From positions 1 through 64,000 of the forward strand of contig QPMI01000530.1 of assembly GCA_004431415.1 (NCBI GenBank): DNA of 64,000 nt. Reading direction: 5' to 3'. Of the stretch, positions 21,320-51,896 are shown piece by piece. The notes beneath the pieces are model-generated. The model was not told the DNA's origin, did no database searches, and was given only the letters and a program-made list of their open reading frames with translations. The DNA comes from Cyanophora paradoxa CCMP329 (Eukaryota > Plantae > Glaucophyta). The position numbers and the translations under genes were made by a program. Position 1 is the stretch's first letter. Every line of letters begins with the position of its first letter.

Positions 21320-21440
21320 GGCATCGGGGGCGCCCATGGCCAGCCCCGGCGCCCCCGCGGACCTAGGCCTCGAGCTCAAGGACCTGGACAGCCCGCCCTT
21401 CGGCAACTCGACGGGCAAGTCTGCCTCGCTCTCCACCAAA
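21320..21440 (+). pseudogene. detached FN3-repeat remnant
   Basis: CTCGAGCTCAAGGACCTGGACAGCCCGCCCTTCGGCAAC is nearly identical to 20266-20304. Confidence 0.75.
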
Positions 21441-21789
21441 AGTGTCGCCTCGCTGGCCAGCGGAGGCGAGTGTCGCCGAGTTGGATGAGAGGATTCCCAT
21501 CCGGTGCAGCGTCCGTGTGGCCACGCACGGGCTGAGGCAGTAGCTGGGAGCACAATTGATCTGCAGCTATTCACAAGTGCACGTACAGGGATCGCGTACC
21601 CCCAGATGGGGCCGCGCCCGGCGCTAACTCAGAATACAGAGAGTACTAGAGCTAGCTGCTCGATAGCACTAGACTAGGGCTAGCGGCTACGCAATAGACT
21701 ACCGGCTAGCCTAGCCCGAGCGAATCGCGGCATGCGACAACTCCTCACTCTGCGTACGGTGCGTCCTCGCTCGGCGGGGGATAGGGGCG

Positions 21790-22107
21790 AGGGCAGCGAG
21801 GGGTACGGGCGAGGGCAGCGAGGGGAAAGGGCGAGGGCGGCTGGGGCCGTGGGTAAGGACGTGGGCGGCTGGGGCCACGGGTAGGGGCGTGGGCGGCAGG
21901 GGCCACGGGTAGGGGCATGGGCGGCAGGGGCCACGGGTAGGGGCGTGGGCGGCAGGGGCCGCTGGTAGGGGCATGGGCGGCTGGGGCCACGGGTAGGGGC
22001 GAGGGCGGCAGGGGCCACGGGTAGGGGCATGGGCGGCAGGGGCCATGGGTAGGGGCGAGGGTGGCGGGGGCCGCGGGTAGGGGCGTGGGCGGCAGGGGCC
22101 GCGGGTA
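21790..22107. repeat. 28-bp G-rich minisatellite (GGGGCCACGGGTAGGGGCGTGGGCGGCA), about 10 copies
   Basis: Direct inspection. Confidence 0.9.
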
Positions 22108-22241
22108 GTACGGGGGAGGGATGCCCGCCGCGAGCGGGGCCAACGCCGGGCCGGGCATGCCGCCGGCGCCCAGCGGCACGAAGCTCCCGCGAGGACGCGG
22201 GAGCCGTCGAGGAAGGCGGGCGGCGCGAGGCGGACGGGGCC

Positions 22242-22345
22242 GGGCTCGGAAGCACCAGCGGAGCCGAGGCTCGGAAGCACCAGCGGAGCCGAGGCTCGGA
22301 AGCACCAGCGGAGCCGAGGCTCGGAAGCCTCAGCGGAGCCGAGGC
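22242..22345. repeat. 25-bp tandem repeat (GGCTCGGAAGCACCAGCGGAGCCGA) x4
   Basis: Direct inspection; no spacers between copies. Confidence 0.9.
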
Positions 22346-22365
22346 TTGAGAACCGGAGGCAGCGC

Positions 22366-25300
22366 TCACGCGAAGTGTGGGCTACCTGCAGCGCCGCCAG
22401 CGGCGAGGGCGGCGTGGCAGGCCTCCAGCGCGCGGCGGGCCGCCACGACGCGCCGCGAGTCTGGCGGGAAGTACTCGTCGAACGCCGCGTACAGCTGCAC
22501 GGGCGGCCGCGTCGGCCGGCGCAGCAGAGCGGCGGGGCGGGGCGGAGCGGGGCGGGGCGGGCGGCACGCCTGGATGCACTCCTCGTACGCCTCGACGGCC
22601 TCCGCGTGGCGCCCCGAAACGGCAAGCACGTCCCCCAGGGCGAAGTTGAGATGGGCGCTCTGCGGCGTCTTTTGGTACGTCCCCAGCACCTGTACCCCCC
22701 TTGCATAAGCGCGGGAGCAACAGCCAGAGCGCGGGTCGCGCCTTGAAGACGACAGCGAGGAGCTTCAGCATGCGGCAGAGGGTTCCGGGGTCGAGCAGAA
22801 GCCAGAAGTTGCGGCTGGTGTTGAGGTAGTCCGAGGTCGGGGCCGCCCACAGCTCTCGCCGTCGCTGGTCCTCCGCTACTAGAAGCCTCACGTACTTGAA
22901 GCCCTGGCGAGGGGCGCTCAAAGAATGCCTAAGCCTTCGACAGCAGGGATGGCGGGCTTACTGCGATGAAATTGAAGCGATGCACGCTCTGAAATATGCG
23001 GTCGACGATATAGTAGCACATGGCGATCGCGACCTCCAGCTCGGTAGGAAAATCGTCAGCAAACACCGTTTCATCCATCTTGGCGTAGAGGGCTTCCGCC
23101 TGTGCGTGGGCACCGCAGCCGGCGGCGATGTGCGCTGTCGGAGCCGGGGCGGGAAGGTGCGTGAGCGAGGCCGGCGGGGCGGCATGAGCGTCGAGTGCGG
23201 GCTTCGCTGACCCAAGAGGTGCGTTATGACCAGCATCTGGAACACGTCGCGCGGGGACCCAGAGTCCGCAAACCAGTACGCCGTTGCAGCTATCTCTTCG
23301 AGCATCTGAGCGTACTTGGCGCGCCGGGCGGCACTCTCTTCCCCCGCCGCAGCCACAGACACCGTGTCGGACGTAAGAAACTGACTCCTGCGGATTGCAC
23401 GCATCAGAGAAAAGTTCAAGGCGGCAGCACGGCGCGGCAGGCAGGCAGGGGGGTACGCACGCTGCGTTCAGGAAAAGCATGAGCAGCGCCAACACGTCGC
23501 ACTCGACGCGCGAGGGGACCAGCCCGTGCTTCCGCAGGAGGCTCCACCTGCGCCACGCGCCCCCTGGTCGACGCCTGTCGCATGGAAACGGAGGGGGAGG
23601 GGGGGGGGAGGGGAGTGGGGAGTGGGGGGGGGGGGGTGAAGAGAGAGAAAGGGAGGGGAAGGAAGGGAGGTAGGGGAGGAGGGGAGAGGGGAGGGACGGG
23701 GGGTGGGGGGGGGGGGCGAAGAGAGAAGGGGGTGGGGGTGAAGAGAGATAGAGGGGGGGAGGGGGAGGGGGGGGGGCGTACGCCTCGAGAAGCATCTGAA
23801 TCGGAACCTCGTCGAGCGGGTGCCGTACCCCTGCCCTCGAGATCGCACCGGCGACCAGGGCACGTGCCTTGAGCTCCGGGTCCTGTACCCGGCCCAGCGC
23901 CATTCAGTACCCCGAACAACGCCGGCGCGGGGCACGCCGCACCTCGACCCGCTGGGCGCAGTCAAGCATGACCCCAGCAACCGCGTCGACGCTCGGCAGA
24001 TCGAGCAGCCAGAGGTCCATAGCCCCGACGAGCACCTGGCGCGAAGAAGCGGGCCCCGGTCAAGTCTAGGGCAGCGCACGGGAGGCGTGTTCGAGCGCAT
24101 GGGGAAGGAGCGTGCCGTCCCGAACTCGAGGAGGGCGATGCACTGCTCCACCGCTGCGCAGAGCTGTTCCCTGCGCCCCGCCTGTCAAACTGCGCCCCGC
24201 GGGGCGGTGCTGCGCCCGCAATCTCACTGTGTAAGGGCCTCGGGGCGGCTGCGGACAGAACGAGACAATGCGTGAGCGGCGCGGCTGAGCGAGGGCCCGG
24301 CGCGGGGCCAGAGCGGACCAGGAAGCGACGCAGGCGACGAGGGAGGACGCGACGGCGTGCGGGCCGGCGTCCGAGCGCCGCGCGCCCCGCAGCGTCTGCA
24401 GCATGCGGTGCGCCCTGTAGCCCCCGATCCCGTCCTGCACGAGGCCCGTCGCCAGCACGCGCGCGTCGCAGCTGCGCCGGCGGTGAGCTTCACCGCACAT
24501 CGGAGGCACCCGGACCCACGCACAGCGCCTCCTGGAACTGCTCGCAGGCGCCCGGAAGCCCCTTCGCAGCCGCCGCGTGCAGCTGCGCCGGCCCCACATC
24601 GCCCGGCGGCGCCCGGAGAGGGGCCGGGGTCGGGGGGCACCTCGAGCAGCCAGGCCTCGAGCGCCGCCTTCTCATCGGCGGAAAGGAGAGTAGGGAACGC
24701 CGGAGGCGGGGCCGCCGGACGGTCTCCTCCGCCCGGCCCCTCGCACAGAGCGGCCGGCGCCGGTCCCGGAGGCAGGAGGACTCTGCACACGAGAATGGAG
24801 ACCGGATCGCGGGCGGTCCCTGCGCCAGCGGCGGCGGCGGCTAACGCACCGCCCGCGGAGATCGAGAAAAGCGTAGGCGTCGGGGATGAGCCCGATGCGC
24901 GGCCTGCGGGAGCGGCGAGTTCAGCAGAGAGAACGGGGACGGTGCCTCTGAGAGGAGGCGCGCACGGCAGGGCGAGCGGCAGTGCGGCCGGCGAGCCCGG
25001 AACCTCTCCCCGCATCTGCAACGGGGGCGGAAGGACTCTGGGATCGCAGCGGCGGCAGGGGCGAAGCGAGCGCAGGGGCGCGCGCACCGCGGGAGCGCCT
25101 GCGACTTGGAATGGGAGCCCGCCAAGAGTGCGGCTCACGATCCGCTCGAAGGCGCCTGAATAGTCATCCGATAGCTGCGCGAACTCTTCAAGAAGGAGCG
25201 ATCAGGCAAGAATCGGGTGCGCGGGGACGGGCGCGCAGGGCGCGAGTCCGACTGTAAATGAGGCCGGGTCGGAAGAGGCCTGCGTCGGACGGTGGAGATG

Positions 25301-25999
25301 TCGAGTGCGGCTCGGCGGGCAGGGGCGCGGGAGACCAGTCGAGCGCCCGGCGCCGCGCGCTCGTCTCGAACTCCTCCGCGGCGACCGCCACCGCCAGGCG
25401 GGAGAGGTCGGCCCCCAGCGCCTCCACCTCCGCGTCCTCCGGCGCCCCAGCGCCGGCGCCGGCGCCGTCCCGTCGCGGCTGCTGCACACTCCCCCCGAGA
25501 TCCGCCTCCGTCCCCCAGCTCGACGGAGACCGCTTGCGCCGCGGGGGGCGCGTGCTGTACATGTTGTCCGGTGCGGTCGGCGACGGGGCCGGGGACGGGG
25601 ACGGCCAGTTCGCCCCTGGCTCGAAAGCTGCTAATGAAATCTGGGGATTCGCCGGCGCCGGCGCCGGCCAGTTCAACGTGAGTGCAGGAGCGGCGCAGTA
25701 CTCCGCCGGACGGCCCGCGGCCGGCGCCGGCGCGTCAACGGGAGCGGGGCCCGGTTCGTCGTCGTCAGGGTTGGGCCTTCTCGCGTCGCGGGCCCGCACC
25801 AGCAGGTTCAGTCGCCCCGGCCCGATCTCGGCCCACGAGCCGTCCGGGCCGACGAGCCGCATGCGCAGCCAGAAGCGCTGAGGCAGCCGCCGCGCGCGCT
25901 GTTGCGTGCGGCGTCACGGGGGCCGCACGCGGGCGCCTCAAACGCTGGCACGGACCGTGTACGACCGGACGGCAACCGCGAACGGAGAGGATATCCCAT
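22366..25999 (-). CDS. multi-exon helical-repeat (TPR-like) protein
   Basis: C-terminal AHLNFALGDVLAVSGRHAEAVEAYEECIQ is a TPR consensus, with GAHAQAEALYAKM upstream; many short introns; the start at MGYPLRSR is tentative. Confidence 0.55.
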
Positions 26000-26684
26000 C
26001 AGCGTCCAGGGCGCAGCGAATTGATCGCCTGGCAAAGGCCGTCCACTCCTCCTCCCGCAGGCAGCGTCCGCCGATAGTCCGGAGATCGATAAGCACATTC
26101 GGGTTCTCTATAGCAGCCCCGGTAATGGCTTGCCTGCGCAGAGATCATATGCATGCACATATGCATGCCGCGCGCGGCCGCGAATGCGGGGATTACTCAC
26201 ACGAGCTCCAACTCCAGAAGCGCCCCAGGCTTGATCATGAAGACGAAGTCTCGAAGTCTCAGGGAGTGTGCGCGGTTGACTAAGATCGTGCACGCTACGC
26301 TGCCGCGCTCGCCTGGCTCCGGCTCGAAAAAGATTTCTCGCGTGTTGCGCCGCACGGAGAAAAGCTGGACCGGGAACGTGCTCGTTACACCCTCCATCTA
26401 CAACGGCAGAGTCTGAGCTGACGGCAACAAGTGCAAAGCGCCTCGTACGTCTCCCAGAACTCCCAGACCAAACCGGAGCTGATTCGGTAGCGACTCGGAA
26501 CTACAGCTTCAGCTAGCTACAGCTTCGGGGAGCGACTCGGAGGGCCGTCGATATCGGCGCCATCGGCCCATCGGGCCATCGCAAGCGGAGGGGTACATGC
26601 GTCCGAAACTTAAGTCGCAAGTCTGGAAAGAGCGCACCGGTACCAGATCAAGAGTCCCCAAGCTCGAGGCGAGGCGAGTGGGGA

Positions 26685-29136
26685 ATGTCGCTTGACGAGC
26701 TCCCGCCGGAGCTGCTGCGCCACGTCGCCAGCTTCCTCCCCGTCCTCGACGCGCTCCGGGCGGCCCGGGCCTGCCGCGCCCTCGCCGACGCCGTCGAAGA
26801 GGCCGTGCGCTCCCTCGCTCACGCCGCCGAGAGCGACGCGCCGCCCGCGGTCGGCGTCCCGCGCTGACCGCTCCGCGGCGCAGACCTGGCGCTCCGCTGT
26901 CATCCCGACGCGCGAGGCCGGGTCGCTGTTGCTGCGCGGCGGCGAGTGCGCATGCGCGGCGCAGCGGGCGGGCGTCGCGCGCCTCGGGTCCCGCCTCGCG
27001 GAATCGGCGGAGGAGATCCTGATGCCGGGCTCTGAGTGGGCCGAGGGCGGCGAGCGGCGCGCGGCGGAGGAGACGCTGCAGACCCTCCTGCTCGCCGCGG
27101 AGCGCTGGCCGCGCCTCCGGCGGGTCGAGGCCTGCGCCGGCGACGCCGCCGCGGCCGCCCTCGCCGCCCGCTGCCCCGCGCTCGAGTCCTTCGTGCTCCG
27201 GGGCGGCTCCCCCGCGCCCCGCGCCCTCTCCGCCTCTCCGCTCTCCGCCGTCGAACTCCGCTGCGCCCGCCTGGCGCCCCTCGCGTGGCTCCGCGCCGCC
27301 TCGGCCCCCGGCGGCCCCGCCCTCTCCCGCCTGCTCCTGCACCGGGGGTACACCCCCGGCGACGAGGACGACGAGGAGGGGGACGAGGAGGAGGAGGAGG
27401 AGGAGGAGGAGGAGGTCCGGGGTACCGCCCTGCGCGCCCTGGCCGCCCGCCACGGGGGTACCCTGACTGGCCTCTCCCTCCCCCGGCTGCCCCGCGGGGG
27501 CGCCCCCGCCCTCTCCGCCCTCCTCCCCCGCCTGACCGAGCTCCACCTCGAATCCTCCCTCCACAGCCCGGACGGTGCGGTACCCCCCCCTCCACCCTTC
27601 GAATTCGATCCTCAATTCTTGGGCAGGGCGGCGCCGGGCATCCCGTACCCTCTCCCGGGCCCTTCGGGGCCTGCCCTCCCTCCGCCGCCTCTCCGCCTCC
27701 TGCGCCGCCGCCGCCGCCCGCGCCCCGCGCGCCTTCCGCCGCGGCAGCGTCCGCGTACCCCTCCCCGACCTCCTCGCCTTCCTCGCATCCGGGTTCGGGT
27801 CCCGCCCGGCCCCCTTTCGCTTTGCTCACGGTACCCCCCAGGGAGGGAATCGAGCGGCTCGAGCTCGAGGGACCCTTCCACTGCCCCGCGACCCGTGCGC
27901 TCGCTCTGAACTCCCGTACCCCCGCTCATGTAACCCGGTACCCCCTCTCCTCCTCGCAGCGGCGGGACTGGAGGCGCTCGCAGCGGTGCTGCGGCGGCAC
28001 GGGCGGTCCCTAGAGCACCTCGTTCTGCCCAAACTGTTCCTCGAGAACGAAGAGGAGGGTACGGGGTTCCAGCCCCGCGCCTAGCCGGGCGTCCAACCGC
28101 GGGGCCGCCAGGGGACGAGGACGAACGGGACGGGGCGACGTACCCCCCGCCCGCTTCGGCCCGCGCGGGCGCCTTCCTGGCCGCACTCCTTCCCCGCTGC
28201 ACGAAGGTACCGCGTACCCCCCACCCCGCCCACGGCCACTCACCGGCGCTCCCCGTCCGTCTGCCCCGTTCTCCCCCTCTCTTTGCCTTGCCCCCCCTCC
28301 CCCCGGCCCGGCTCCCAGCTTCGTTCGCTCTTTTCGGCATTTGGCGGCCGGGGCGAGGAGCTTCCGCGCGAGGTTCGCCGTACCCCCACCACGCTTTCCC
28401 CCCTGCCGCTTACCCCCTGCGGCAGGCCCGGAGATGGCGGTGGGGTCGCGACACGGGAGGCGGCTGGGAGGTACCCCCCCCACAACGCCGTCCCTGTACC
28501 CCCGTCAGCTCAGCGCCGCACAGGAAAGCGAGGGCTCCTCGTCGGACGGGGAGGGTCGCGATCCTGTACCCCCGCAGCCTGTACCCCTGGCCCCGGCGGC
28601 CCCGCCCCCACCGGCCCCGCCCCTGCCCGGCCCCTGGCTCGCGTCCCTACCCCCCTCCCTCGAAGCCCTCTCCGTTCGAGGCGTCCAGGTACCCCTTCCC
28701 TCTCCCCCCTCCCTTCCCTTCCCCCGACGTCCAGGACCAAGGTCCGCGCAGGGCGTAACCCCCTCTGACGTCTCCCGTCTCCTCTCATCCCGCCCCTACC
28801 TCCGACTCGCCCTCCGCCGGGTGCGTACCCCTCCTTCCCCGCCCCTTTCCGTTCACGATCTTACGCCCCTGTACCCCCAGATCGAGCTTGCGAGCGCCTA
28901 CGAGGTGGGGGCTTGGAGGGAAGCCTCTGCGGCGCGGGCCCCCCCGGCCGCCCTCTACGAGTGCGACTCGGTACCCCCCCCTCTCCAACCCCCAACCGAC
29001 CGTACCCCTCTGACCCGGTACCCCCGAGGGCGAGGGCCTGCTGGAGTGCGCGGACGTGTGCAGGGGGCTCGGGGAGGGGGCGGGGGCCGGGGAGGCCCTT
29101 GCGGAGGGCGGGCCTGAGCTTCTGTACGTCATGTGA
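26685..29136 (+). CDS. F-box/LRR protein, multi-exon
   Basis: MSLDELPPELLRHVASFLPVLDALRAARACRAL is a classic F-box; intron 26805-26883; RCPALESFVL, LTGLSLP and LPRLTELHL are LRR-like; ends ...ELLYVM* at 29136. Confidence 0.8.
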
Positions 29137-30109
29137 TCTGAGATGTCTGAGGCGGCGGCGCTGCCGCCGCCATGGCTTCTCGTGCTCCTGAGGCATGCCC
29201 CCGGGCCCCTTTCCTGTTCATGAGTTGCGAGAAGAAATTTGCTTGGATAGGTCCGGCCAGGCATGCGCAGGAAGGGGTTTGCCGCCCTCCCCGCGCGCTG
29301 CTGTTTCCAGCGGCTCGGCCGGGCCGCTCCTGTGAGCAAGTGCCGGTGCCAGTCTGAAAGCCGGAGCGAGTGGCGGTGCCAGTCCGAAACTTCGCCAAGT
29401 TGAAAGCCAATTGCAAAGCCTTGCAATTGAAGGCGCCCAAACGGCCCGGCAGCCTCAGGGCCCGGGTCTATCTCTCTCCATTGCATGAATGTGTCCTCCG
29501 ACTGGCGGTCGGGCCGGCGGCTGAGCTCGAGTCTTAACATGTACGGCAGAAGCTTTATGAGAGCGCAGCCTCATGATCAGGAGTCATGATCATGAGCCAG
29601 CGCCGCTGCACTTGAGCGCGAGCGCAAGAGAAGAAAGCACTAGCCGCCACCGCGATTGATGACAATTTGCAATGACAGCTTCAGCGACTCTCGGCCTTCG
29701 ATTCCTCGCGGGCTTTGAGTACCCATTTTATTAGCGCTTGCACAGCGCTTCAGCTTAAACTTCTAATTCCGGTGTTGAAGTTGACCTTGTGCATTGCAGT
29801 TTCAACGAGCCATGACATGCGAGTTAATGTCTACGTATACGCCTCACACTACCTGAGAATCTGATGCTCTACGTAAATCACTCTACAGATCTATAGCTAA
29901 AGCTCATTATAAAAGCTAATGCGAACACCTTTGCCTTCAAGGCTTCCTGATGAGTCTGCGGCGAAGTATAAAACGTTCCTTTGTGAAATCCTGCTAAAGA
30001 GTAATTTGAAACGACCACCGTCCGGCTGCAAATACAGAGTTGAGGTGTTTTATTGTCTGGTCAATGAAGAAGAATCCATGCAATGATCCAAAAAGAAAGA
30101 AAGAAAGAA

Positions 30110-41187: not shown

Positions 41188-42582
41188 GCTATAGCTATAG
41201 CTAGCGCTAGCGCCGCTAGCTATAGAGATCTAGTAGATGGCTAACTTAGAAAGTTAGCGTGCGCTAGCGCTAGCGCTAGCGCTACTAGACTAGCGCCTAG
41301 TAGTAGTAGCTAGCTATATAGCGCGCGCTAGCGCTAGCCTAGTAGCGCTAGCGAACATTCGCCGAGTCGGTTCGCAGAAAGTACCGAACTCGGCCCTATT
41401 GATATGTACGACTTGACCCCCTTCCGAAGTTCGGAACCCAGCCTGAGTCAGTCCTCCACTGCTGGCCACGTGCTGCCACGCGTACGGTGCTGGGCCAGTC
41501 TGGAGTCTGGACTCTGGAGTCTGGACTCGGAGTCTCGGAGTCTCGGTCCCTCGGACTGCCCGCGGCCGCGGCCGCGCGCGCCCGACGCGCTGGGCGGCCT
41601 GGGCCGGCGCCGGGCCGCGCTGATCGAGCAGCCGATCGCGACCCGGTGACCGACAGTTCGATCCGGAACTTTCTGAATCCGAACTCCGCAATCGGAAAAT
41701 CTGAAATCCGAAGCACTGCGGCCCGGCGCCGGCGCCGGGCCGGCGGGCCGGGCGGCATCAGGGCCTGATTCAGGGGCTCCGAACTGGGATCCGGAACTTC
41801 TGCTGACTCAGTGAGTCTGCTCCACCTACCTTTTTTTTTTGCCAAAGCCCATATCAAGGGCAGGACGATTGTATTAGTTCAGTAACTTTATCGTACGCAC
41901 TACCGGTTCGGAATGGGCCGAACTCTGGGTCAGAGCATAACCTGAGGCCGGGACACAGGGATAGGCGCTTCGACGCTACGGCTGAGCGTTTCTCTTGTAG
42001 GGGGGGAGCGTGGTAGGGGACCGTTGTTGAGAGATGTAGATGCGGGAGCCGTAGCCCCTAGGGGGCCTTTGTTGAGAGTGTAGAGGCGGGAGTCGCGGCT
42101 CCAAGGGGGCCCTTCTGGGGAGGCGGGGGTAGGGAGGGGGGGGGAAGGGGTGGGGGCGGCGCGGGCGAGGGTAGCGGGCGCGCCCCCTTATTTTTATTGT
42201 GCGTGGGGCGCGGGGGGTGTTTATGAGCCCGAGGGGGCGGGCGGTGGCGGGCGGGGTGGCCGCCCTGGTGGGGTCGTGGGAAGGAGGGGCGTGGTGGAGG
42301 CGGAGGCCGCGGGGCTAGGCTGTCGCTAGCGTTCGGGCCAGGGGGAGTGCTTAGGAGGGTGGGGCGGGCCCGCGGGCGGGCAGGGCTTTTCGCGAGGGCG
42401 GGGTAGGGGGGTGTCATTGCTTCATAGAGCTATCTAACTCAGAAAGGGAGGGCGGTGGGCGTTCATAGCGCCCCCTCCGTCGGCAGTCTGGCTACCGTAA
42501 ATCGTGGTAAAGAGAATAAAGAAAGCGGAGGCCGAGGCGGCGAGGGAAGCGGGGCCGCGGGGGCCTACAGAAAAGAGAAAAT

Positions 42583-42808
42583 CTACGCTGCCGCGTTGTC
42601 GGCGGCGGCCGCCCGGCGGCCTGCCAGGAAGGCCTCGACCGCGGCGGGGCCCCCGAGGGCCGAGGTGAGCTCGGCGAGCACGCGCTGGGCCGCCTGGTAA
42701 TTGGTGAGCGAGATGGTAGCCGGCCCGGGGCCGGGGGCGGGGGCCGGGCCCGGGGCAGGCGCGGGCACGGGGGCGGCGGCCGCGGCCGGCGCCGGGGCGG
42801 CGGCGGCA

Positions 42809-42839
<31 letters not shown>

Positions 42840-44762
42840 CGGCGGCGTCGGCGGCGGCGATGGGGGCGGCGGCGGCGGCGGGGGCGGCGGCGCCACCCTT
42901 GCGCTTCTTGAGGGCGTCGGGGCCGAAGCGCTCGATGGCGCGCTTGCGCGACTGGGCGGCGATGTCCGCCGCGATCTGGGCAGCCTCCTGGGGGGTCTTG
43001 TCCTCGTTGAGGGCGCTGAGGCGGTTGAGCCGGCGCGCGCCCGTGGAGTGGCCCTGGCGGTAGGAGGCGCGGCCGCCGATCCCGTCGGGGTAGTTGATGC
43101 GGTGCTCGCGGGTGATCTTCTTGCTCTTCTGGGTGGCCTCCAGGGCCACCGAGTCGGGGTAGAGCACCTGCCGCCCGGGCGTGGGCCGGCGGGCGGGGTA
43201 CCGGGCCGGCGGGCGGGGTACGAAGGTTGCCTACCTCCTGCTCCTCGCCCTCGGAGTCGTCCGAGTCCGGCACGGGCTCCATTTCCTTGCCCAGGACGGC
43301 GATGTTGTCACCGTCGCGCTTGAAGCGGCGGGGCTTGTCGGCCGTGAGGTTCACGGTCTTGATCTTGTCGTCGACGATGGCGGGCTCGAGCCAGACGGAC
43401 TGCGCGGGCAAGCCCGGGCGTGGGTGAGGGAGCCGGGGCGGGGCGCTTGGTTTTAGGTTCCTTTCCCCCATAGGGGGGGGGCGAAGGGCCCGAGGCGCGG
43501 GGCCTTCGCACCCGGGACATCTCGGCGAGGGCGTCCTCGGTGTACACCCCCGGGATGTCGCAGAAGATGCGGTAGGACCAGCCCAGCTCGCGCTGCTCCT
43601 CGGTGAGGCCGGCGTAGACCGCGTGGCGGCTCGCGACGGAGAGGTCCTGGCAGAGGCGAATCTGCACGCGCGCGCGCGGGCTTAGGCGCGCGATTGCGAG
43701 GCGAGTCGGAGGCAGACCTTCAGCTTGCGGTGCTCATGGCCGAGGGCGAGCTCGACCATAGCGAGGCAGCCGCGCGAGTCGGGGAAGCGGGCGCGCAGGT
43801 CGCGGTTCATGGACATGGAGATGTCGACGTCGGTGAGGTGGACGAGGGCCACCTTCTTGTAGCGGCCGATGAGGTAGACGTCGGCCATGACGTCGCGGAT
43901 CCGCTCGAGCCAGCCGAGCTCCTCGAAGGTCCGGTGCGCGAGGACCGTGAGGTAGTCCGTGCGCAGCGTGCCGTCGCGTTCGACGAGGTCCGGGAACTTG
44001 GTGAAGTCCACGCCGTCGTCGAGCTTCAGCAGCTTGTTGAACTGCGCCCGCGATTCGGGTATGGCGTTGAGCGCGGCCCGCGCGGTGCGCGATAGGGGTG
44101 CGCGCACCATCTCCTTCTCATAGAGGATGGCGTTGTCGGCCTTGACGGACGACAGGACGAGAGTGCGCTTCGATTTGTCGACGAGCACCTTGCCGCGCTT
44201 GGTGACACGGGTCGTGGCGCCGTTCGGCAGCGGCTTGGGTGCAGGGAGCGGCGCCTGGCGAGGCGACTGCTGCTCCTCGTCCTGTTTTTATTCGAGGCGT
44301 TATGTGGCGCGCGCATGAGAGGGGCGGAGCTTGCCTGGGCATCTTCGGGGGCCGGAGCTGGCGGGGCGGCCGTCGTGGTCTTTTTCTGCGACCTCGGCGA
44401 CGTGCGCTTCGGCTGGGCGGTCCCACGCGGGCGCCCGCGGCCCTATTGGCGGCGTCTGAGCTGCGGGCTCGACGGGGCCGGCGGCCAGGGGCGCGTACCG
44501 ACTTGGGCTTCGCCGAGCCGGACCCGGACGGGCCGGCCACGGCCGGCGGCGGCGGTGGCGGCGCCTGCGCGGCCTGCTTCTCCTTCAGCCTCTCGCTGGG
44601 CTTGGGTGGGGCCTGGAAGGCCTGGTGCGCTTGCTTCGGCGGTGACTTGGGCGGCGAGCCCGCGCGCGACCCGGCGGCGGCACCGGCGGGCTTCAGCGTC
44701 TTGGTCGGAGACGAATGCCGGGCGCCGTGCACGAGGAAGGGCATGATCGGAACCGCGGCCAT
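42583..44762 (-). CDS. 7-exon, predicted 589-aa protein with an AT-hook, an unknown globular core and an Ala-rich tail (inside the retrotransposon)
   Basis: Exons 44762-44499, 44442-44335, 44281-44108, 44041-43718, 43661-43512, 43399-43235 and 43167-42583 splice into one open frame; five GT-AG and one GC-AG intron; KPKS|GRGRPRG AT-hook. Confidence 0.8.
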
Positions 44763-44892
44763 GGTGGCAGAGGTCGGTCTTGGCGGGAGTGACTGCGAGG
44801 TCCCCGGTATGGGGGTCCCGGGGGAAATCCGGGCTATGATTGGGGATCGGGTACCCCTCTTGGGGGGGCGAGGGCCAATTTGCATCGGTGCG

Positions 44893-45568
44893 ATGGCGGA
44901 TCTGCCGGAGGAAGCGCTGGGGCGTGGCGCGCCGGCGTCTGCGGAGTGCAAGCGGGAGCGTAGCGATAGCGACTCGTCCGCCGACGAGCCAGCGGCGAAG
45001 CGGGCGGCTGTCGAGGGTGACCGCGCAGCAGCTGCGCCGGCCTCTCCGGTCAGTGGCGATGGGGTGGCTCTGAGCGGCTTTGCCGATGATGTTCTCGTGG
45101 CCGGGAGCCCCAGCGCGCAGCCTGGTGAGGTCGTGCCTGCGGACTTCCCGATGTTGAGGACACTCCGCGGCCAGCTTCGCGCCGCGGCGGCGATGTTCCG
45201 CGATGGCGAAGTCCGGGCGTATTTCTATGAGTTGCCCTATCCCGGCTGCACCCAGGTGCCGAAGAAGAGTACGCTGGCGTTTTACGCAGTGCGCAACGGA
45301 CTCCGGCCCGGGATTTACTCGATCTGGTGCGCAGTTGCGCCTGATGCATTGATCGCGGCGGATTTCGTGAGCGCTTATGACACCATATCGCCTGCTTCGG
45401 CGGGGGCCGTCTTTGCTCGTCTTCTGCAGGGATCAGACGGCGACCTATCCGGGGCGGCAGTGCGCCCTGGCCCAGGTGTGGCGGGTGCCGGGAGTTCGGG
45501 GTCGGGACTCCCGGCGCTTCCTCACCATCGATCAGGCGATGGATTTCTTGGTGCGCGCCTGGTCGTGA
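44893..45568 (+). CDS. 190-aa protein with a C-terminal RNase H1 hybrid-binding / caulimovirus viroplasmin (Cauli_VI-like) domain and no RNase H catalytic domain
   Basis: Removing intron 45327-45429 (GTGCG...CTGCAG) gives FYAVRNGLRPGIYSIWDQ...CALAQVWRVPG...SRRFLTIDQAMDFL, matching the FYAV..G..PGIY..W..C..QV...PG....F.T..EA..FL consensus. Confidence 0.85.
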
Positions 45569-45714
45569 CCCGCGCGCGCACCTTCTCCTCCGGCTGACGG
45601 CTCTCGCGCGGTTGCAGGAGGGTGATGGGACCGCTGCTAGCGGGCTGGAGGCGATCGAGCACTCTCGGCCAGCAGGGCTGAAATGCCCGTGGGAGTGAGG
45701 GAGGCGTACTCGCT

Positions 45715-48700
45715 TCACTCGTCGGAGGCGCTGTCGGAGTCGGATTCCGGCTGCGGGTCGAGGAGGGGCCCGCGGGCGAGAGTAGTCTCAGCTTCAGAGC
45801 GGTGTGCTGTTGCAATGAAGCCGTCTGCTGTCCAGAGTGCCCGGGGGGGCGCATGCACATTCGGCGCCGTGCTCTGGGGGGCGTCGGGGTCGGCCGGCTC
45901 CCAGCTCCAAGCAACGGTGTCGGGGTCTAGGGAGGGCTGCGCGGCGTCCTGGGGGAGGCCGCGGGCTGTGAGTTCAATCTTGCTCTGCTCGAGGAGGACT
46001 CGGGCCCAAACCGCTCGCTCAAAGGCGCGCCATATCGTCGTCTTGGTGACTCGCTGGGGCGATCCGGCGGGGTTATCCGGGGCGTGGTCCTGGAGGGTTC
46101 GGGCGTGGGCGGACCACGCCGCGCTGATCATGAGGCCGGCGAGCGCCGCGAGCAGGGAGCGGGGCATGCGAAATTCGCGCCTTTGGCGGGCGGAGCCGGT
46201 TTGGCGTTTCTGAGCGTCGTCGGGGACAGCGAGGAAGCCGGTGAGGGCGTGCGCGCAGTCGAGGGGGATGGAGGTCCCATAGTAGGTGTTCCATCTATCG
46301 AGGAGCTCTTCCCAGGCCCCGCGCGCTGGCTCGCAGTAAAATATTGCATGGTCGGATGTATCCGGGGGGACATCAGGGCCGGGGCAGGCGCAGCAGTACG
46401 GGGATGGGCGGGCCCCGATTTGGAAGAGAAAACGGCCGGCGGGGAGGCACGCGTGAGTGGCCCAGAGCCACGTCTCGCGGTTCCAGGGGGAGAGGTGGGC
46501 GTGTTGCGTGCCCGTACGCCACACCTGGGTCCAGCACTTGCCGGGGGGCGGGGGGCCGAAGCGGGCGAGGGGGCCCGGTTCGGGACGGGCGGGTTGGGCT
46601 CGGAGGGCGCGGTAGCCGGCCGAGATGCGGTATTGGAGCCAGGGGCGGGGCCCCGCCGGGGTCCTGTAGAGGAGCCCGGCGTGAATCCAGGGCGCGCGGT
46701 CGAGGCGGCCTGCCGCGACGGTGCGGCCGTCGGGCCAGCGGGTTTTTTGTTTCGCTGAGCCCGGGGGAACGGCGATGAGCAGGGCTCGGGGCAGGAGCGC
46801 GGGGGCGGCTGGGAGGGGCTCCGGGGGGGCTGGCGGGCCGAGGACGGTGCCGTCGGGGAGGGTGGGGGCTAGGCAGCCCTGCGGCGGCTCGCCGGGAGAC
46901 GCAAAGAGGATCCTCCCGGAGTGTGGCCGTCTAGGGCCGGAGCCCGCACCTGCCGGGTCGGCGGCGAGCCAGATCCGGGGGTCGATCTCGGGGAGGATGG
47001 CCTGGGGGGGCGTGTCGATTGGGGCGAGGCCGAGTTGGGTGGCGCGGAGGCGGACCTGAGCCCGGATTTCGTTCAGGCGCGTGTACGCGGCCGGGTTGAG
47101 GTTCTGGGGCGCGGGGCCCGTGACCTGGTGTACGGCGGCTAGCTTGGTCGCTAGGGCGTCGTCAAGCTTGCCGGTGCCCCACTGGTCCCCTGGCGGGGAT
47201 AGTACCGGGTTGAGCCAGAGCGGTTCTGCCCGGAAGCGGTCTCGCGTGAGCGGCAGAGATGTAACTGCGCGGTGCGGTGGGCAACGCAGAGGGAGCGGGC
47301 CGGACTCCGGCGGTCGGAGGAGCGTGAGGGCGCGCACCGCTGGCGCTAGGGGGCCCTGCATGGGGAGGAGAGAGGCGTACGAGCGGAAACGGAGCTCGGC
47401 GCCCAGTGCATTGAGGCCGAGCGCTCGTGCTGCTGCCGCGTACTTCTTCGGGACTAGCTCCGGCATCTCCTCTGCGGCGAAGAGTTTCCATAGCGCGAAG
47501 GAGGGATCGCAGAGCGCGCGGATGTACGTGCCTGCTTGGGCGAGGAGGCGGCTCTCCACGTCAAGCGCGCCGAGGCCACCGTGTGACGGCGGGAGGACGG
47601 CCTTGGCACGCGAGATCCGGCCGCGGGCTGTGCGTTTGCTGGGGGACGCCTCTGCCGAGGGTGGCCAGATGGCCGCCCAGTATTCATCCTTGATGGCCCG
47701 GAGCGCCGCAGGGGGGCAGGGGAGGAAAGCAGCCGCGTACATGTTAACTGATGCGACGATGGCCGTGGCTACGTAGACCCGCTGGTGAACACGCATCGCT
47801 CGTAGATTCCAGCGTGCCCTGCGGCTGCGCATCCCGTCTACACGCTTGGCCCAGTAAGGGTTGGCATCGAAATCGCCGCGCGGGCCTAACGGGATACCTA
47901 GCGTGGACGTGGTCTTGACCCAGCGGATCGGGATCGTTTGGGTCCATTCGGGAAGAGTCGTTGGCTTGCCTGGTTGTTTGGGAGGTGCTGCTGCACCGGC
48001 GAGCATGCCTTCGGTTTTGCTGAGATTGAGCGAGGATCCGTTGTAGCGGCCCGCCTTCTGATACTTAGCTATGGTTTTCTTCACCGGGAGACCTGGGTCG
48101 GGGCTGCGGGGGTTGATCTTGAGCGAGTGCGCTGCGTCGTCCGCGTATTGGACCAGCTTGGATTCGAGCCGGGGCTCTTTGGGGGTGGGTACGCCGGTAA
48201 TTTCCGGGTCCGCGAGGATGTCGCGCGTGGTGGGTTCTTGCTGAGTGTTAAAGAACATACATGCGAAAGGATCGCCCTGGAGCGCGCTGCGCGTGACAGG
48301 AATAATGATGGGGTAGATGGTACCGTTGATCATAACTTTTGATCGTGCGCCCTTCGTGATGGCGCGGACATCCGCCAGGAATTCAGGCGGGAAGCCTTGA
48401 ACGGCGAGGACCCGGAGTGCGTACAGGTGCTCTACGCGGTCATAAGCTTTCTCGAAGTCAGTATTCAGGATTACTACATGTTGATCCGTGCGGTTCGCGT
48501 GTCGGATAACCGCCTGCATCTGCCAAACATTATCTGAGCCGTTGCGGTCTTGCATGAACCCCGTTTGGACGGAGCTGATCGTGTGCTGGCAAGCGGGCGC
48601 GATGCGCTTTGCCAAGACCGCCCGAGGAGGCGGCGGTCTATCTGCAGGAGTGTGATAGGCCTCCAGTTCTGGATCTTATCGCGGTCGCCCTTTTTGTAGA

Positions 48701-50722
48701 GGAGCTGGATAAGCCCCGTCCGCTGGCGCTCAGACAGGATTCCAAGTGCGCGCGCGCAGTTGTAGCTTTCCGTGACTAGGGGGCCGAGGACGTCCCAGAA
48801 CTCTAGATAGAATTTGACTGTGAGGCCGTCCTCGCCCGGCGCTGTCGCTTTGTTCATGTCTCTTAGGCACGCCTCGACTTCGCCGACCGTATAGGGGGCG
48901 CGCATCGGGGGGTGCAGGGGCGGGGGCGCTGTATCTAGGCAGCGGGAGAGGAGCTCCGCCTCTTCGTGGGAGAGGGGGTCGGCTGGCGTGAGGAGATGGG
49001 CGGCTCGCAGCTTGGCGACGACTGCCGGGAAGGCGTCGGCTGCCGCCGGCGTCACGTCCACGGGGCTCGAGGCTCCGGGATCCGGATTCGGGCGAGCGCC
49101 ATCTGGCTCAGACCCCGGTGCTTGCGGGTTCGGCCAAGCCGTTCCCGGGAGCGGGCGAGCGCCATCTGGCTCGGACCCCGCGGGGCGTCTGGGCGAGCAG
49201 GTGAATGCTCATGCGCCCGCGCAGGAGGAAGCCGCGGCGGTGCCGGCGGGTCTTGGCCGGGGGGGTCGGGGGGGAGCGGGCGCTGGGCGGCGAGAAGCTC
49301 CGTGTAGTACGCGCAGGCGATCTCCGCGATGCCCGCCTCCGACGTAGCCGCGGGGGTACCCTCGCTCGGGGGGTACGGCTGCAGCGAGCGCATGTGGTTA
49401 TCAGCCGAGGAGTACTTGATGTGGCGCGCTAGGTCCGGGGGGACGGCGTGCGCATGAGCGAGAGAGCGTTCTAGGTGTTTGCGTGAGCTTAGGGCGGCGT
49501 CCGCGGCGTCGAGCGCTGCTTCCTGGACGGCTAGGTAGCCCATGTCGGCGACGGCATAGTCTTCTTCGGTAGTGTCCACTTCCGCGTCCTGGAGCGCTTG
49601 CTCTGCGTCGCGCCATAGGCCTGCGATCGACTCGCGCGCATCGCGGATTGCGGAGTCAGCCTGAGGGCGGGTCCGGCGGGCTATCTCCCTGTACTCGGCG
49701 AAGAGGTCGTCTAGCCAGGCTTGCCAGGCTGCGGTGCGGAGGGGCGGCTGCTGCGGCAACGCGACTGCCGTGCGCGCCCGTACCGCCTGCTGGAATTGGG
49801 GGTGTTGGAGGACGCGGTCGAGAAGCCGGAAGCGCGCAGCGCGGGGCTTGATGACGGCGTCGGTGTGGAGACGCGCGTACACTGCGTCATGGTCCGGGCG
49901 CGGGGCCGCGCCCGCTGTGCGGAGGACGCCGACGCGTTCCGCCGCGACGCAGAGGTCGGCGGACAGGAAGACGTGGTCGAGGCGCGCCGCGTTCTGGTCG
50001 AAGCGGTTTGTCTTGCGGTGCCAGCGCGTGTAGATGCGGTCGCGCGGACGCCTGCGGCGATGCTCATCAAACAGGTCGAGGTCGGCCATGAGCGCGGCCC
50101 AGTGCCCGAACGGGGGCGGGGCGCCGGCGCGGCGTCTGCTCTCGAGGTGCGGGGTCGCGTATGCGTTCAGGTCTCCTCCGAGGATGAGGGCGTCGCTCGG
50201 GGGGAGGTTGAGTGATTCGATCGCTTGGGTGACACCTGCCGCCGTGCGCTTCTGCGACGCCGCATCGTTCGGCACGTAGATACAGGCTATAGTGTACGAG
50301 TTAACGTCGCTGGCGAGGCGCAGGACCGTGGCGTCATGCGGCTTTAGACCGGGCGTGGGTGGGAGGGGCACGAGGTCTGCGGTGGCGCCCGGCAGGGCCG
50401 GGATGGTCTTGCGAACAAGGAATCCGGTTCCTCTGCTCCAGACATTCGGTTTGAGCTCTGCGGCGGGCGGAATGAGCACCCGCCAAGTAGATTCGATGCG
50501 CTGTGTAAGAGAGGCGATCTGCTTCGGGCGGAGCCGGTGGTCTATGATGCCCAGAACGTCTACTTTGGTGCGCTTGAGCCACCCGGTGAGCCAGATGCGG
50601 CGCGGTATGCCTGCGAGGCTTTCAACATTCAAAAAGGCGACCGTAAGCAGCGGGCGGGGCGTCGGGGCGCCCGGGGGCGCGTCCGACGGGGCCGCCGTCG
50701 TGTGAGCTGGTCTATCTGGCAT
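45715..50722 (-). CDS. L1/Tx1-type ORF2: AP endonuclease, reverse transcriptase and C-terminal CCHC finger; two frameshifts (about 49060-49280 and about 48615)
   Basis: APE motifs FLNVESL, IYVPN, GGDLN, RLDHVF, PDHDAV; RT motifs APGEDG, NWRPITLL, QTGF, DFEKAYDRV, QGDP, YADD, LNLSKT; zinc finger CCAC...HAIFYC. Confidence 0.97.
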
Positions 50723-51242
50723 GAGACCGCGTCGGGGCTGCTGGGGTGTGCTGGTTGTCGAGTTTGGTAATGCTGGGCTACTGGGCGTCGGCCGCGCGAG
50801 TTTTGGGACCAGCCACGTGCAGTGCTAGCGGGCACCCGCGTTAGGGAAGCCCCACTGCGCCGGCTTACTCGCTCGCGGGCCTTCGCTCAATTTTCCGGGG
50901 TACCGGAATCGATCCAATTTAAGCATTCCTACATGCATGCCTGCTCCACCTACCTACATAGTACATACCAGTATGTTATGATATGTAGTGCGCCAAATCA
51001 GCCTCTCAGGCTGGTCTCAATTCTGACCGAAGGGAAGAAGAGACCAGAGGCTATACTGCCGACTTCGGATCCGTAACCATCGAGCAGTACCATCACTATC
51101 GAGGTTTTTTGGTAGTAGGTATGAAGTGAATGAGTGTTATTGACCCTGGCGTAGATATTGACCCTTGGCTGCTGCCCCCCCCCCCCCCCCCCCCGGCCTC
51201 ACCCCCCTCCCCCCCCCCCCCCCCCCCCCCCCGCCCACACTG

Positions 51243-51896
51243 CTGTCAGCTCAGCCCCGCGCAGGAGAGCGAGGGCTCATCGTCAGATGGGGAGGGTCAC
51301 GGGGAGGGTCCACTGTCCCTCCCTGTACCCCCGGCCCCGCCGGCCCCGCCCCAGCCGGCCCCGCCCCTGCCCGGCTCCTGGCTTGCGTCCCTACCCCCCT
51401 CCCTCGAAGCCCTCTCCGTTTGAGGCGTCCAGGTACCGGTACCCCTTCCCTCTCCCCCCTCCCTTCCCTTCCCCCGACGTCCAGGACCAAGGTCCGCGCA
51501 GGGCGTAACCCCCTCTGACGTCTCCCGTCTCCTCTCATCCCGCCCCTACGTATACCTCCGACTCGCCCTCCGCCGGGTGCGTACCCCTCCTTCCCCGCCC
51601 CCTTCCGTTCACGATCTTACGCCCCTGTACCCCCAGATCGAGCTTGCGAGCGCCTACGAGGTGGGGGCTTGGCGGGAGGCCTCCGCGGCGCGCGCCCCGC
51701 CGGCCGCCCTCTACGAATGCGACTCGGTACCCCCCCTCCATCCCCCCGCACGAACATACCCCTCTGACCCGGTACCCCCCAGGGCGAGGGCCTGCTGGAG
51801 TGCGCGGACGTGTGCAGGGGGCTCGGGGAGGGGGCGGGGTCCGGGGAGGCCTCTGCGGAGGGCGGGCCTGAGCTTCGAATTCTGTACGTCATGTGA
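51243..51896 (+). pseudogene. 5'-truncated copy of the F-box gene 3' end
   Basis: Near-identical to about 28503-29136; CGA>TGA nonsense change at 51421 and small insertions. Confidence 0.85.

What the first reader, a model, noticed from the sequence alone, without database searches (positions are those of the whole stretch)
44893..45568. Stand-alone RNase H1 hybrid-binding (Cauli_VI-like) protein encoded antisense in a LINE
Seen: the spliced 190-aa ORF has a basic NLS-like N-terminus (KRER...PAAKRA) and ends right after the HBD, which carries a ~9-aa insertion; there is no RNase H catalytic domain here and none recognisable in ORF2. Known: this domain binds RNA:DNA hybrids and dsRNA in RNase H1 and occurs in caulimovirus P6, a silencing suppressor. 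Inference: it could shield the TPRT RNA:DNA intermediate from host RNase H1 or act against RNA silencing.
Basis: partly seen in the sequence, partly recalled or inferred. Interest (0 to 1): 0.82.

Follow-up and report, generated by a model that had tools for sequence, protein, structure and literature searches.

The report
LINE-borne antisense hybrid-binding-domain gene
A jumping gene (LINE retrotransposon) of the alga Cyanophora paradoxa carries, on its opposite strand, a small expressed and spliced gene whose protein is only the RNA:DNA-hybrid-binding module of RNase H1 without the nuclease, an accessory gene I found no report of in this class of element.

Summary
The window is Cyanophora paradoxa. 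A 9.1-kb minus-strand LINE (41832-50940) is bounded by an exact 15-bp target-site duplication and a poly(A) tail, and the plus-strand gene lies inside it, tail-to-tail with ORF2.

The CDS therefore has three exons (44893-45326, 45430-45550, 45618-45698; 211 aa). The mRNA is polyadenylated at 45832, and no nuclease domain follows.

The window's exons were searched separately and never joined:
- Exon 1 alone gives a partial Cauli_VI match.
- Public paralog gene models, 81-92% identical to the three exons, pass Pfam's threshold over the whole domain.
- A profile comparison with canonical hybrid-binding domains (HBDs) gives 98.5% probability.
- The best structural match is the human RNase H1 HBD.

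The 110-aa module was found only in Cyanophora, as seven gene models in three subfamilies. In a second subfamily, about 50-60% identical, the HBD gene model is again numbered next to the ORF2 model. The five listed differences in an expressed paralog are all synonymous.

So this is a conserved, expressed LINE accessory gene. Shielding of the RNA:cDNA hybrid, or suppression of silencing, remains inference. First-reader notes of this scan report similar antisense HBD genes on other pieces of this genome.

The parts
41832..50940 (-). Full LINE insertion (about 9.1 kb). In minus-strand order: short 5' leader, ORF2 (EN, RT, zinc-finger region), antisense HBD gene, sense accessory gene, 3' tail, poly(A).
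   Evidence: An exact 15-bp repeat flanks it on both sides and occurs only twice in the window. The only A/T run of 7 or more in 41.7-51.1 kb is the terminal T10. GC is 65-73% against 54-61% in the flanks.
41817..41831 (.). Target-site duplication, left copy (CTGCTCCACCTACCT), followed by the T run 41832-41840, which is the element's poly(A) tail.
50941..50955 (.). Target-site duplication, right copy.
45715..50722 (-). ORF2: Exo_endo_phos endonuclease (50722-49052), RT (RVT_1) and a weak zf-RVT match (48615-45715). In this copy it is read in three frames, with shifts near 49187-49280 and near 48619. No RNase H domain.
   Evidence: Pfam; tblastn of the paralog ORF2 P0033. Public model P0030 = tig00021015_g17151.
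44873..45832 (+). HBD gene transcript as seen in RNA contigs. 5' contig ends lie at 44873-44895 and the poly(A) site at 45832. The 3' UTR overlaps the last 118 nt of ORF2 in antisense.
   Evidence: read laying pieces and the loose end A9+adapter at 45832.
44893..45326 (+). CDS exon 1 (144 codons + 2 nt). Holds the low-complexity, NLS-like N-terminus, the conserved family-specific beta-hairpin region and HBD strands beta1-beta2 (LAFYAVRNGLRPGIYSI + the first 2 nt of Trp).
   Evidence: 100% identical to P0001; partial Cauli_VI match at positions 2-15.
45327..45429 (+). Intron 1 (GT..AG, 103 nt).
   Evidence: Contigs end at 45327 and begin at 45429 in X3 and X12. Paralog models P0002/P0029 read straight across the join.
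45430..45550 (+). CDS exon 2: the rest of the HBD (W-DQTATYPGRQ insertion, helix, RRF strand, IDQAMDFL helix).
   Evidence: 88-92% identical to P0002/P0029. RNA contigs run through it unbroken.
45551..45617 (+). Intron 2 (GT..AG, 67 nt).
   Evidence: Joint 45549/50->45617/18 in contigs of X1, X3 and X12.
45618..45698 (+). CDS exon 3: a 26-aa tail EGDG...RPAGLKCPWE plus the TGA stop.
   Evidence: The tail is conserved in P0002, P0029, P0003 and P0004.
44823..44872 (.). A gap of about 50 bp between the outermost RNA contigs of the two divergent genes: a candidate bidirectional internal promoter.
   Evidence: Contig ends at 44811-44822 (minus gene) and 44873-44895 (plus gene). Inference only, because contigs cannot define transcription starts.
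42583..44822 (-). Sense-strand accessory gene, divergent from the HBD gene. ATG near 44762. Introns 44442-44497, 44281-44333, 44042-44107 and 43662-43717 were seen, and at least one more lies downstream. No family match.
   Evidence: Joints; sequence; no Pfam or Atlas hit.

Best explanation
Shown here: the locus is an integral accessory gene of a Cyanophora paradoxa LINE lineage.
- The gene sits in the element's 3' half on the antisense strand and converges on ORF2.
- Its RNA is spliced twice and polyadenylated.
- It encodes a 211-aa protein with a variable, NLS-like acidic/basic N-terminus and a conserved module of about 110 aa.
- The core of that module is one RNase H1-type hybrid-binding domain (beta-beta-alpha-beta-alpha) with a 9-aa insertion, a family-specific N-terminal beta-hairpin and a C-terminal PAG[LM][KR]xPW tail.
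- There is no nuclease domain.

Inferred, not shown:
- The gene probably has its own promoter, placed back-to-back with a second accessory gene.
- The protein acts in trans as a binder of A-form duplexes made by the element. The most likely target is the LINE RNA:cDNA heteroduplex formed during target-primed reverse transcription. Occupying it could delay or direct host RNase H, since this LINE has no RNase H of its own.
- A second possible target is the dsRNA formed by the 118-nt sense/antisense transcript overlap.
- Because the gene lies at the 3' end and seems to have its own promoter, it would survive 5' truncation, so dead copies could keep supplying the protein.
For: Inside the LINE:
- A 15-bp exact TSD plus the terminal poly(A) enclose ORF2 and the gene. 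No internal A/T run of 7 or more exists that would mark a nested retroposon.

Expressed:
- Spliced contigs occur in three RNA runs from different studies. Intron 2 is seen directly, and a poly(A)+adapter lies at 45832.

HBD identity:
- Pfam Cauli_VI scores 30.4, 26.5, 29.4, 27.6 and 27.6 bits (cut-off 21) for paralog models P0002, P0029, P0003, P0004 and P0016.
- The locus's own public model P0001 scores 22.9 bits.
- The window's exons are 81-92% identical to P0002/P0029.
- hhalign of the family against canonical HBDs gives 98.5% probability, E 2.4e-15.
- The best structural match is 3BSU, the human RNase H1 HBD bound to a hybrid: Z 3.6, rmsd 2.0 A over 46 of 50 residues.
- Binding residues: the Trp equivalent to human W43 is invariant, and K59/K60 are RR in the window. 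Mutating W43, K59 and K60 in human RNase H1 gives a non-binding protein (PMC6868509).

Conserved with the LINE:
- HBD models g16046 and g24612 are numbered next to ORF2 homologs g16045 and g24611, just as g17150 and g17151 are here.
- ORF2 identity between subfamilies is 51-64% and HBD module identity 50-58%.
- In a copy whose ORF2 is 74-90% identical (P0034), the gene model also holds a piece of the sense accessory gene.

Selection:
- The five listed differences in an expressed paralog (45466, 45493, 45496, 45511, 45517) are all synonymous third positions (with the reading frame).

No RNase H in ORF2.
Against: - No binding or retrotransposition data exist.
- The AlphaFold model has low confidence (pLDDT 60), and Foldseek alone is not significant.
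- The aromatic residue at the human F58 position is Ser or Ala in two subfamilies, and Y29 is Ile in the P0004 subfamily, so hybrid specificity may differ.
- Linkage in other loci rests on gene numbering, not on DNA. No paralog DNA could be fetched.
- For three of the six named HBD loci no neighbouring ORF2 model was found.
- ORF2 of this copy is frame-shifted twice, which is either decay or assembly error.
- Contigs cannot show transcription starts or relative expression levels.
Confidence: 0.6

Rival explanations
1. Silencing suppressor. The protein mainly binds dsRNA, for example the duplex formed by the convergent ORF2 and HBD transcripts or other LINE sense/antisense pairs, and so blunts the host's RNAi. 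This would be analogous to the silencing-suppressor role of caulimovirus P6.
For: HBDs also bind dsRNA (established knowledge about RNase H1 and P6). The HBD mRNA overlaps the ORF2 3' end by 118 nt in antisense. C. paradoxa is reported to have a primitive RNAi pathway (PMC6704402).
Against: Overlapping 3' UTRs are reported as common in this genome (PMC6704402), so the overlap need not be special. No small-RNA data were examined. As far as I know, P6 suppression has not been pinned to this domain.
Confidence: 0.15
2. Passenger. A host divergent gene pair, one member carrying an HBD, was picked up by 3' transduction and is carried along. It is expressed from its own promoter but contributes nothing to the LINE.
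For: The pair has spliceosomal introns and what looks like its own promoter, like host genes. LINE 3' transduction is well known. A captured PF01693 gene is reported in a Pleurotus Helitron (PMC4289320).
Against: The adjacency recurs in a subfamily whose ORF2 is only 51-64% identical, with the HBD module diverged to a similar degree. Variation is synonymous-only. No copy of the 110-aa module was found outside Cyanophora among 1.84 billion representatives, and none was shown to lie outside LINEs.
Confidence: 0.15
3. Self-restraint or host-serving regulator. The HBD protein competes with ORF2p or host factors on the hybrid and lowers retrotransposition, or it has been co-opted for host R-loop biology.
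For: The accessory genes give RNA contigs while the sampled part of ORF2 (45924-46500) gives none in three RNA runs. ORF2 of this copy is frame-shifted while the HBD gene is intact.
Against: Contigs cannot show absence of RNA. A repressor would not obviously be kept by the element across subfamilies.
Confidence: 0.1

Closest known systems
N-terminal hybrid-binding domain of eukaryotic RNase H1 (Pfam PF01693; human structure 3BSU)
   Same: The same domain family by Pfam, profile-profile and structural comparison. The Trp and the basic pair that make up the human binding triad are kept.
   Different: No RNase H catalytic domain on the same protein. There is a 9-aa insertion after the Trp, extra conserved N- and C-terminal elements, and the F58-equivalent aromatic is not conserved. 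It is encoded by a retrotransposon, not a host housekeeping gene.
Caulimovirus P6 / transactivator-viroplasmin (the protein that gives Cauli_VI its name)
   Same: A reverse-transcribing element encodes a protein that carries this domain without a nuclease. BFVD entries named transactivator/viroplasmin appear among the top, non-significant, structural rows.
   Different: P6 is a large multifunctional protein of a pararetrovirus, encoded on the sense strand. Here the protein is small, the gene has introns, it is antisense, and it sits in a non-LTR element. No closer sequence relationship to P6 than to other HBDs was shown.
Antisense products of LINEs: primate L1 ORF0 (from my own knowledge) and the spliced antisense transcripts of Drosophila TART (PMC1636488)
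   Same: Transcription from inside a LINE on the antisense strand; splicing of the antisense RNA in TART.
   Different: As far as I know, those products have no recognised folded domain or conserved protein function. Here the antisense gene encodes a recognised nucleic-acid-binding domain and is conserved between subfamilies.
LINEs that encode their own RNase H domain in ORF2 (e.g. I, Tad and plant L1 with an archaeal-type RNH; from my own knowledge), and LINEs that carry unusual cargo genes (SymbioLINEs with a DNA methyltransferase, mentioned in PMC12344493)
   Same: Element-encoded functions that deal with the RNA:DNA intermediate, or accessory enzymes carried by LINEs.
   Different: Only the hybrid-binding half of RNase H1 is present. 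It is a separate gene on the other strand, not a domain of ORF2.
Helitron-captured PF01693 gene (capE) in Pleurotus ostreatus (PMC4289320)
   Same: A transposable element carrying a stand-alone gene with this domain.
   Different: That is a DNA transposon, the gene is described as captured, and it is found in one subfamily copy. It has no link to reverse transcription.

Membership tests
RNase H1 N-terminal hybrid-binding domain (Pfam PF01693 Cauli_VI) | Sequence match to the family profile above the curated threshold (21 bits) | tested here: met
Paralog models score 30.4, 26.5, 29.4, 27.6 and 27.6 bits, four of them over profile positions 1/2-44. The locus model P0001 scores 22.9 bits. The window's exon 1 alone scores 16.6 bits and exon 2 alone gives no match. 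hhalign of the family against canonical HBDs gives 98.5% probability.
RNase H1 N-terminal hybrid-binding domain (Pfam PF01693 Cauli_VI) | beta-beta-alpha-beta-alpha fold superposable on a solved HBD | tested here: inconclusive
   The AF2 model of paralog P0029:70-188 has the right order of elements, but pLDDT is 60. The VIA-align top hit is 3BSU_G, Z 3.6, rmsd 2.0 A over 46/50. Foldseek E-values are not significant.
RNase H1 N-terminal hybrid-binding domain (Pfam PF01693 Cauli_VI) | Binding residues equivalent to human W43, K59 and K60 | tested here: met
   The Trp is invariant in all 16 aligned sequences. K59/K60 are RR in the window, P0002, P0029 and P0004, and QK in P0003. Their role in human RNase H1 is taken from PMC6868509. 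Y29 is Ile in P0004/P0016, and F58 is Ser, Ala or Tyr.
RNase H1 N-terminal hybrid-binding domain (Pfam PF01693 Cauli_VI) | Actual binding of RNA:DNA hybrid or dsRNA | not testable with these tools
   Needs EMSA or fluorescence anisotropy with recombinant protein.
Full RNase H1 enzyme | C-terminal RNase H catalytic domain (PF00075) on the same polypeptide | tested here: not met
   The stop is at 45696-45698 and the poly(A) site at 45832. No RNase_H hit was found in any family member.
APE-type non-LTR retrotransposon (LINE), L1-like | Endonuclease + RT ORF, poly(A) tail, target-site duplication | tested here: met
   Exo_endo_phos, RVT_1 and a weak zf-RVT match; T10 tail and 15-bp TSD. Clade assignment (L1 versus Tx1) was not tested.
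Accessory gene of the LINE family (as opposed to a one-off passenger) | Present at the same position in independent, diverged copies | tested here: inconclusive
   Gene numbers are adjacent at two further contigs of a subfamily about 50-60% identical. The order of genes is supported in one closer copy by P0034. DNA of those loci was not available. Three unverified first-reader notes describe the same layout elsewhere in the genome.

The most novel reading that the evidence does not exclude
A non-LTR retrotransposon lineage has replaced the usual 'own RNase H domain or rely on the host' choice with a separately expressed, nuclease-free hybrid-binding protein. That protein guards or hands over its RNA:cDNA intermediate, or sequesters its dsRNA from RNAi. 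It would be the first LINE-encoded counter-defence or hybrid-management factor, encoded antisense with introns and apparently its own promoter, so that even 5'-truncated copies keep producing it.
Probability: 0.3. Interest if true: 0.85.

Novelty: new variant of a known kind. Interest (0 to 1): 0.66.

Why it matters
LINEs are usually described as one- or two-ORF elements whose only dealings with the RNA:DNA intermediate are an optional RNase H domain or host enzymes. This lineage keeps a separate, spliced, antisense gene for just the hybrid-binding module. That widens the known gene repertoire and gene architecture of non-LTR elements.

It is also a natural counterpart of the engineered 'HBD-only' R-loop probes, and it parallels caulimovirus P6.

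The case offers a concrete way to ask how retroelements protect or process their replication intermediate. It also shows how intron-bearing genes can ride inside a retrotransposed element.

Tried and rejected
- **Joined exons:** Public gene models of the locus and its paralogs stood in for them.
- **Paralog DNA:** The look-up of encoding contigs held nothing for P0002, P0029, P0004 or P0003. Their position inside LINE boundaries, their orientation and their dN/dS could therefore not be checked.
- **Shorter ORF2 models:** a third word search, with the ORF2 C-terminus as query, tried to catch shorter ORF2 models beside the remaining HBD loci. It returned only the window's own model.
- **Structure searches:** Foldseek against PDB and BFVD gave no significant hit. 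Only the VIA-align second look put 3BSU first.
- **Sense accessory protein:** the ESM Atlas gave nothing, and Pfam gave nothing at E<=1 apart from chance-level rows.
- **Other copies in the window:** a self-BLAST found no second copy of the element, and tblastn found no second HBD gene.
- **Promoter scan:** the bacterial-type scan of the intergenic gap was empty and is not meaningful for a eukaryote.
- **Chance ORF in GC-rich DNA (rejected):** the long unspliced ORF 44239-45597 is indeed a GC artefact. The spliced CDS, however, is backed by RNA, by paralogs and by synonymous variation.
- **Nested poly(A) retroposon (rejected):** an earlier follow-up found that at another locus, but there is no internal A/T run here.
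- **Splicing on to an RNase H domain (rejected):**
- **Public model's extra intron (rejected):** the 60-nt intron 45476-45535 in P0001 is not supported, because RNA contigs run through it.

Full report
**Source and setting**

The public gene models that match this window are EukProt EP00741 Cyanophora paradoxa, contig tig00021015. The window has a background of about 50-60% GC with islands near 70% GC. One island, 41.8-51 kb, holds a minus-strand retroelement.
- ORF 50722-49052 matches Exo_endo_phos.
- ORF 48615-45715 matches RVT_1 and, weakly, zf-RVT.
- No RNase H family appears even at E<=1.

**The element's limits**

The 15-mer CTGCTCCACCTACCT occurs exactly twice in the window, at 41817-41831 and 50941-50955.
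- The left copy is followed directly by a T run (41832-40), which is the poly(A) tail of a minus-strand element.
- That run is the only A/T run of 7 or more between 41.7 and 51.1 kb, so nothing marks a second, nested poly(A) retroposon.
- The insertion is therefore one 9.1-kb LINE, 41832-50940, and the finding (44893-45568, plus strand) lies inside it.
- There is room for only about 220 nt upstream of ORF2, so there is no upstream ORF1.
- ORF2 of this copy is read in three frames, with shifts near 49187-49280 and near 48619. I could not tell real decay from assembly error.

**Gene structure from RNA**

I laid contigs of three RNA-type runs (X1, X3, X12, from different studies) and one DNA run (X15) on 43500-46500, which is 3,001 letters and within the operators' limit. 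The three runs are labelled only as 'RNA?', but their contigs lack GT..AG segments on both strands. They are therefore RNA-derived.

On the plus strand:
- Contigs cover 44873/44879/44895 to 45268/45327.
- Further contigs cover 45429 to 45549, joined directly to 45617-45832.
- The skipped 67 nt is GT..AG, with the cut one base to the right (45551-45617).
- At 45832 one contig continues with A9 followed by Illumina adapter sequence, which marks a poly(A) site of a plus-sense mRNA.

Exon 2 ends in phase 0 after ...AMDFL. Exon 3 (45618-45695) reads EGDGTAASGLEAIEHSRPAGLKCPWE and is followed by TGA at 45696-98.

Intron 1 (45327-45429, GT..AG) is not bridged by a reported joint. Contigs do stop and start exactly at its edges, with the one-base ambiguity a splice join would give. 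The paralog models P0002 and P0029 also read straight across the same join.

The CDS is thus 434 + 121 + 81 nt = 211 codons. It does not reach any nuclease domain. The public model of this locus (P0001, g17150) has the same three exons but also removes 45476-45535. The RNA contigs run through that stretch, so I regard that extra intron as an annotation error.

**Is it a hybrid-binding domain?**

By rule I searched the window's exons one at a time and did not join them.
- Exon 1 alone matches Cauli_VI positions 2-15 (E 0.0097), and exon 2 alone matches nothing. That is expected for a 44-residue profile cut in two and carrying an insertion.
- Database proteins returned by the tools supply the joined reading. 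P0002 (111 aa) and P0029 (188 aa) are 81-92% identical to the three window exons.
- P0002 matches Cauli_VI over positions 2-44 at 30.4 bits against a cut-off of 21. P0029 scores 26.5 bits, but its best stretch covers only profile positions 2-21. P0003, P0004 and P0016 score 29.4, 27.6 and 27.6.
- A profile of the five family members aligned to a profile of ten canonical HBDs gives 98.5% probability (E 2.4e-15), with a 9-residue and a 3-residue insertion.
- An AlphaFold model of P0029:70-188 has low confidence (pLDDT 60). It shows a beta-hairpin followed by beta-beta-alpha-beta-alpha.
- Foldseek is not significant. In the VIA-align second look the top chain is 3BSU, the human RNase H1 HBD bound to an RNA/DNA duplex: Z 3.6, rmsd 2.0 A over 46 of 50 residues.
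- The Trp aligned with human W43 is invariant, and its codon is the one split by intron 1. K59/K60 are RR. The human W43A/K59A/K60A mutant is used as a non-binding control (PMC6868509).
- The F58 position is Ser, Ala or Tyr, and Y29 is Ile in one subfamily, so specificity may have shifted.

**Family and linkage**

An exhaustive HMMER scan of 1.84 billion representatives gave 15 hits at E<=1e-3.
- Only Cyanophora proteins share the whole 110-aa module.
- The rest are ordinary RNase H1 enzymes or multi-HBD proteins that match only the domain.
- With cluster members there are seven gene models in three subfamilies: the window/P0002/P0029 group (81-92% identical to the window's exons), P0003 (58% identical to P0002), and P0004/P0016 (50% identical to P0002).

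ORF2 homologs found with the RT ORF include tig00020930_g16045 and tig00000383_g24611, at 51-56% identity.
- Their numbers are adjacent to the HBD models g16046 (P0004) and g24612 (P0016), just as g17151 and g17150 are here.
- tblastn puts ORF2 identity between the two subfamilies at 52-64% and the HBD exons at 36-58%. The two genes have diverged together.
- In a closer copy (P0034, ORF2 74-90% identical) the gene model runs from ORF2 into the last exon of the sense accessory gene. That fits the same gene order.
- For g18405, g8147 and g19981 no ORF2 neighbour was recovered. Those could be 5'-truncated copies or unannotated ORF2s.
- DNA of the paralogs could not be fetched, so the linkage evidence is indirect.

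First-reader notes of this scan describe antisense HBD genes in retroelements on three other pieces of this genome: s1-525254, s1-569560 and s1-573986. I did not verify them.

**Selection**

A variant contig from a paralog differs at 11 positions in exon 2. The five positions listed (45466, 45493, 45496, 45511, 45517) all fall on third codon positions and are all synonymous: Ala, Gly, Val, Ser, Arg (with the frame). Thirty-nine residues of the 110-aa module are invariant across subfamilies, including positions outside the HBD core.

**Neighbourhood**

Divergent from the HBD gene is a minus-strand (LINE-sense) gene.
- Its ATG is near 44762, and four introns were seen in RNA contigs. It matches no family.
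- The outermost contigs of the two genes lie about 50 bp apart (44822 and 44873), which suggests a bidirectional promoter. Contigs cannot prove transcription starts.
- The three RNA runs give no contig over ORF2 45924-46500, while the DNA run covers it. This hints that the 3' gene pair is expressed independently of ORF2, but contigs cannot show absence.
- The HBD mRNA's 3' UTR overlaps the end of ORF2 by 118 nt. Overlapping UTRs are said to be common in this genome (PMC6704402).

**Mechanism**

Shown here:
- The gene is a conserved, expressed, nuclease-free HBD protein.
- It is encoded antisense inside a LINE that has no RNase H.

Inferred:
- The protein binds A-form duplexes made by the element.
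- I favour the RNA:cDNA hybrid of target-primed reverse transcription as the target. The protein would shield it from host RNase H, or time the hand-over to it.
- dsRNA sequestration against RNAi is the main alternative.
- A mere transduced passenger, or a self-limiting or host-serving factor, are further rivals.
- The 3' position and the apparent own promoter would let 5'-truncated copies keep expressing the protein in trans.

**Comparison and novelty**

The domain is known, and a retro-element protein carrying it without a nuclease is known (caulimovirus P6). Antisense LINE products are known (TART antisense transcripts, PMC1636488; L1 ORF0). One Helitron with a captured PF01693 gene is reported (PMC4289320).

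Full-text searches found no report of an HBD-only gene in a non-LTR retrotransposon. The C. paradoxa genome paper gives only the LINE share of the genome (2.47%) and no element structure. I therefore rate it a new variant of a known kind, of fairly high interest, with its function still open.

Noticed in passing
window 42583-44822 (-): A LINE-sense accessory gene keeps at least four spliceosomal introns inside a poly(A)/TSD-bounded retroelement, and they are spliced in RNA contigs. Its protein (basic/AT-hook-like N-terminus, globular middle, Ala/Pro-rich tail) matches no Pfam or Atlas family. How the template RNA escapes splicing is unexplained.
   Followed up: partly
window 45268-45335 (+): One RNA contig (X1, depth 9.8) joins 45268 to 45335 (66 nt, GT..AG, in frame) and then runs on through the 3' part of intron 1. 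This is a possible isoform or paralog lacking the first half of the HBD.
   Followed up: no
window 45476-45535 (+): The public gene model tig00021015_g17150 (P0001) removes 60 nt, which is 20 residues of the HBD. RNA contigs run straight through, so this is probably an annotation error.
   Followed up: yes
window 48619 and 49187-49280 (-): ORF2 of this otherwise intact-looking, TSD-flanked copy is split over three reading frames. It is undecided whether these are real frameshifts or long-read assembly indels.
   Followed up: partly
window 51245-51500 and 28504-28750: A 256-bp direct repeat at 86.7% identity sits just outside the LINE's right TSD and in another GC-rich island. It encodes proline-rich low-complexity sequence.
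   Followed up: no
window 44873-44890 (+): The sequence GGCCAATTTGCAT (a CCAAT box overlapping an ATTTGCAT octamer-like motif) sits right where the HBD-gene RNA contigs begin. It may be chance.
   Followed up: no
window 10000-30000: Further islands of about 70% GC contain long ORFs with no Pfam match, apart from a weak fn3 hit at 16943-18478. None is related to this LINE by BLAST.
   Followed up: partly
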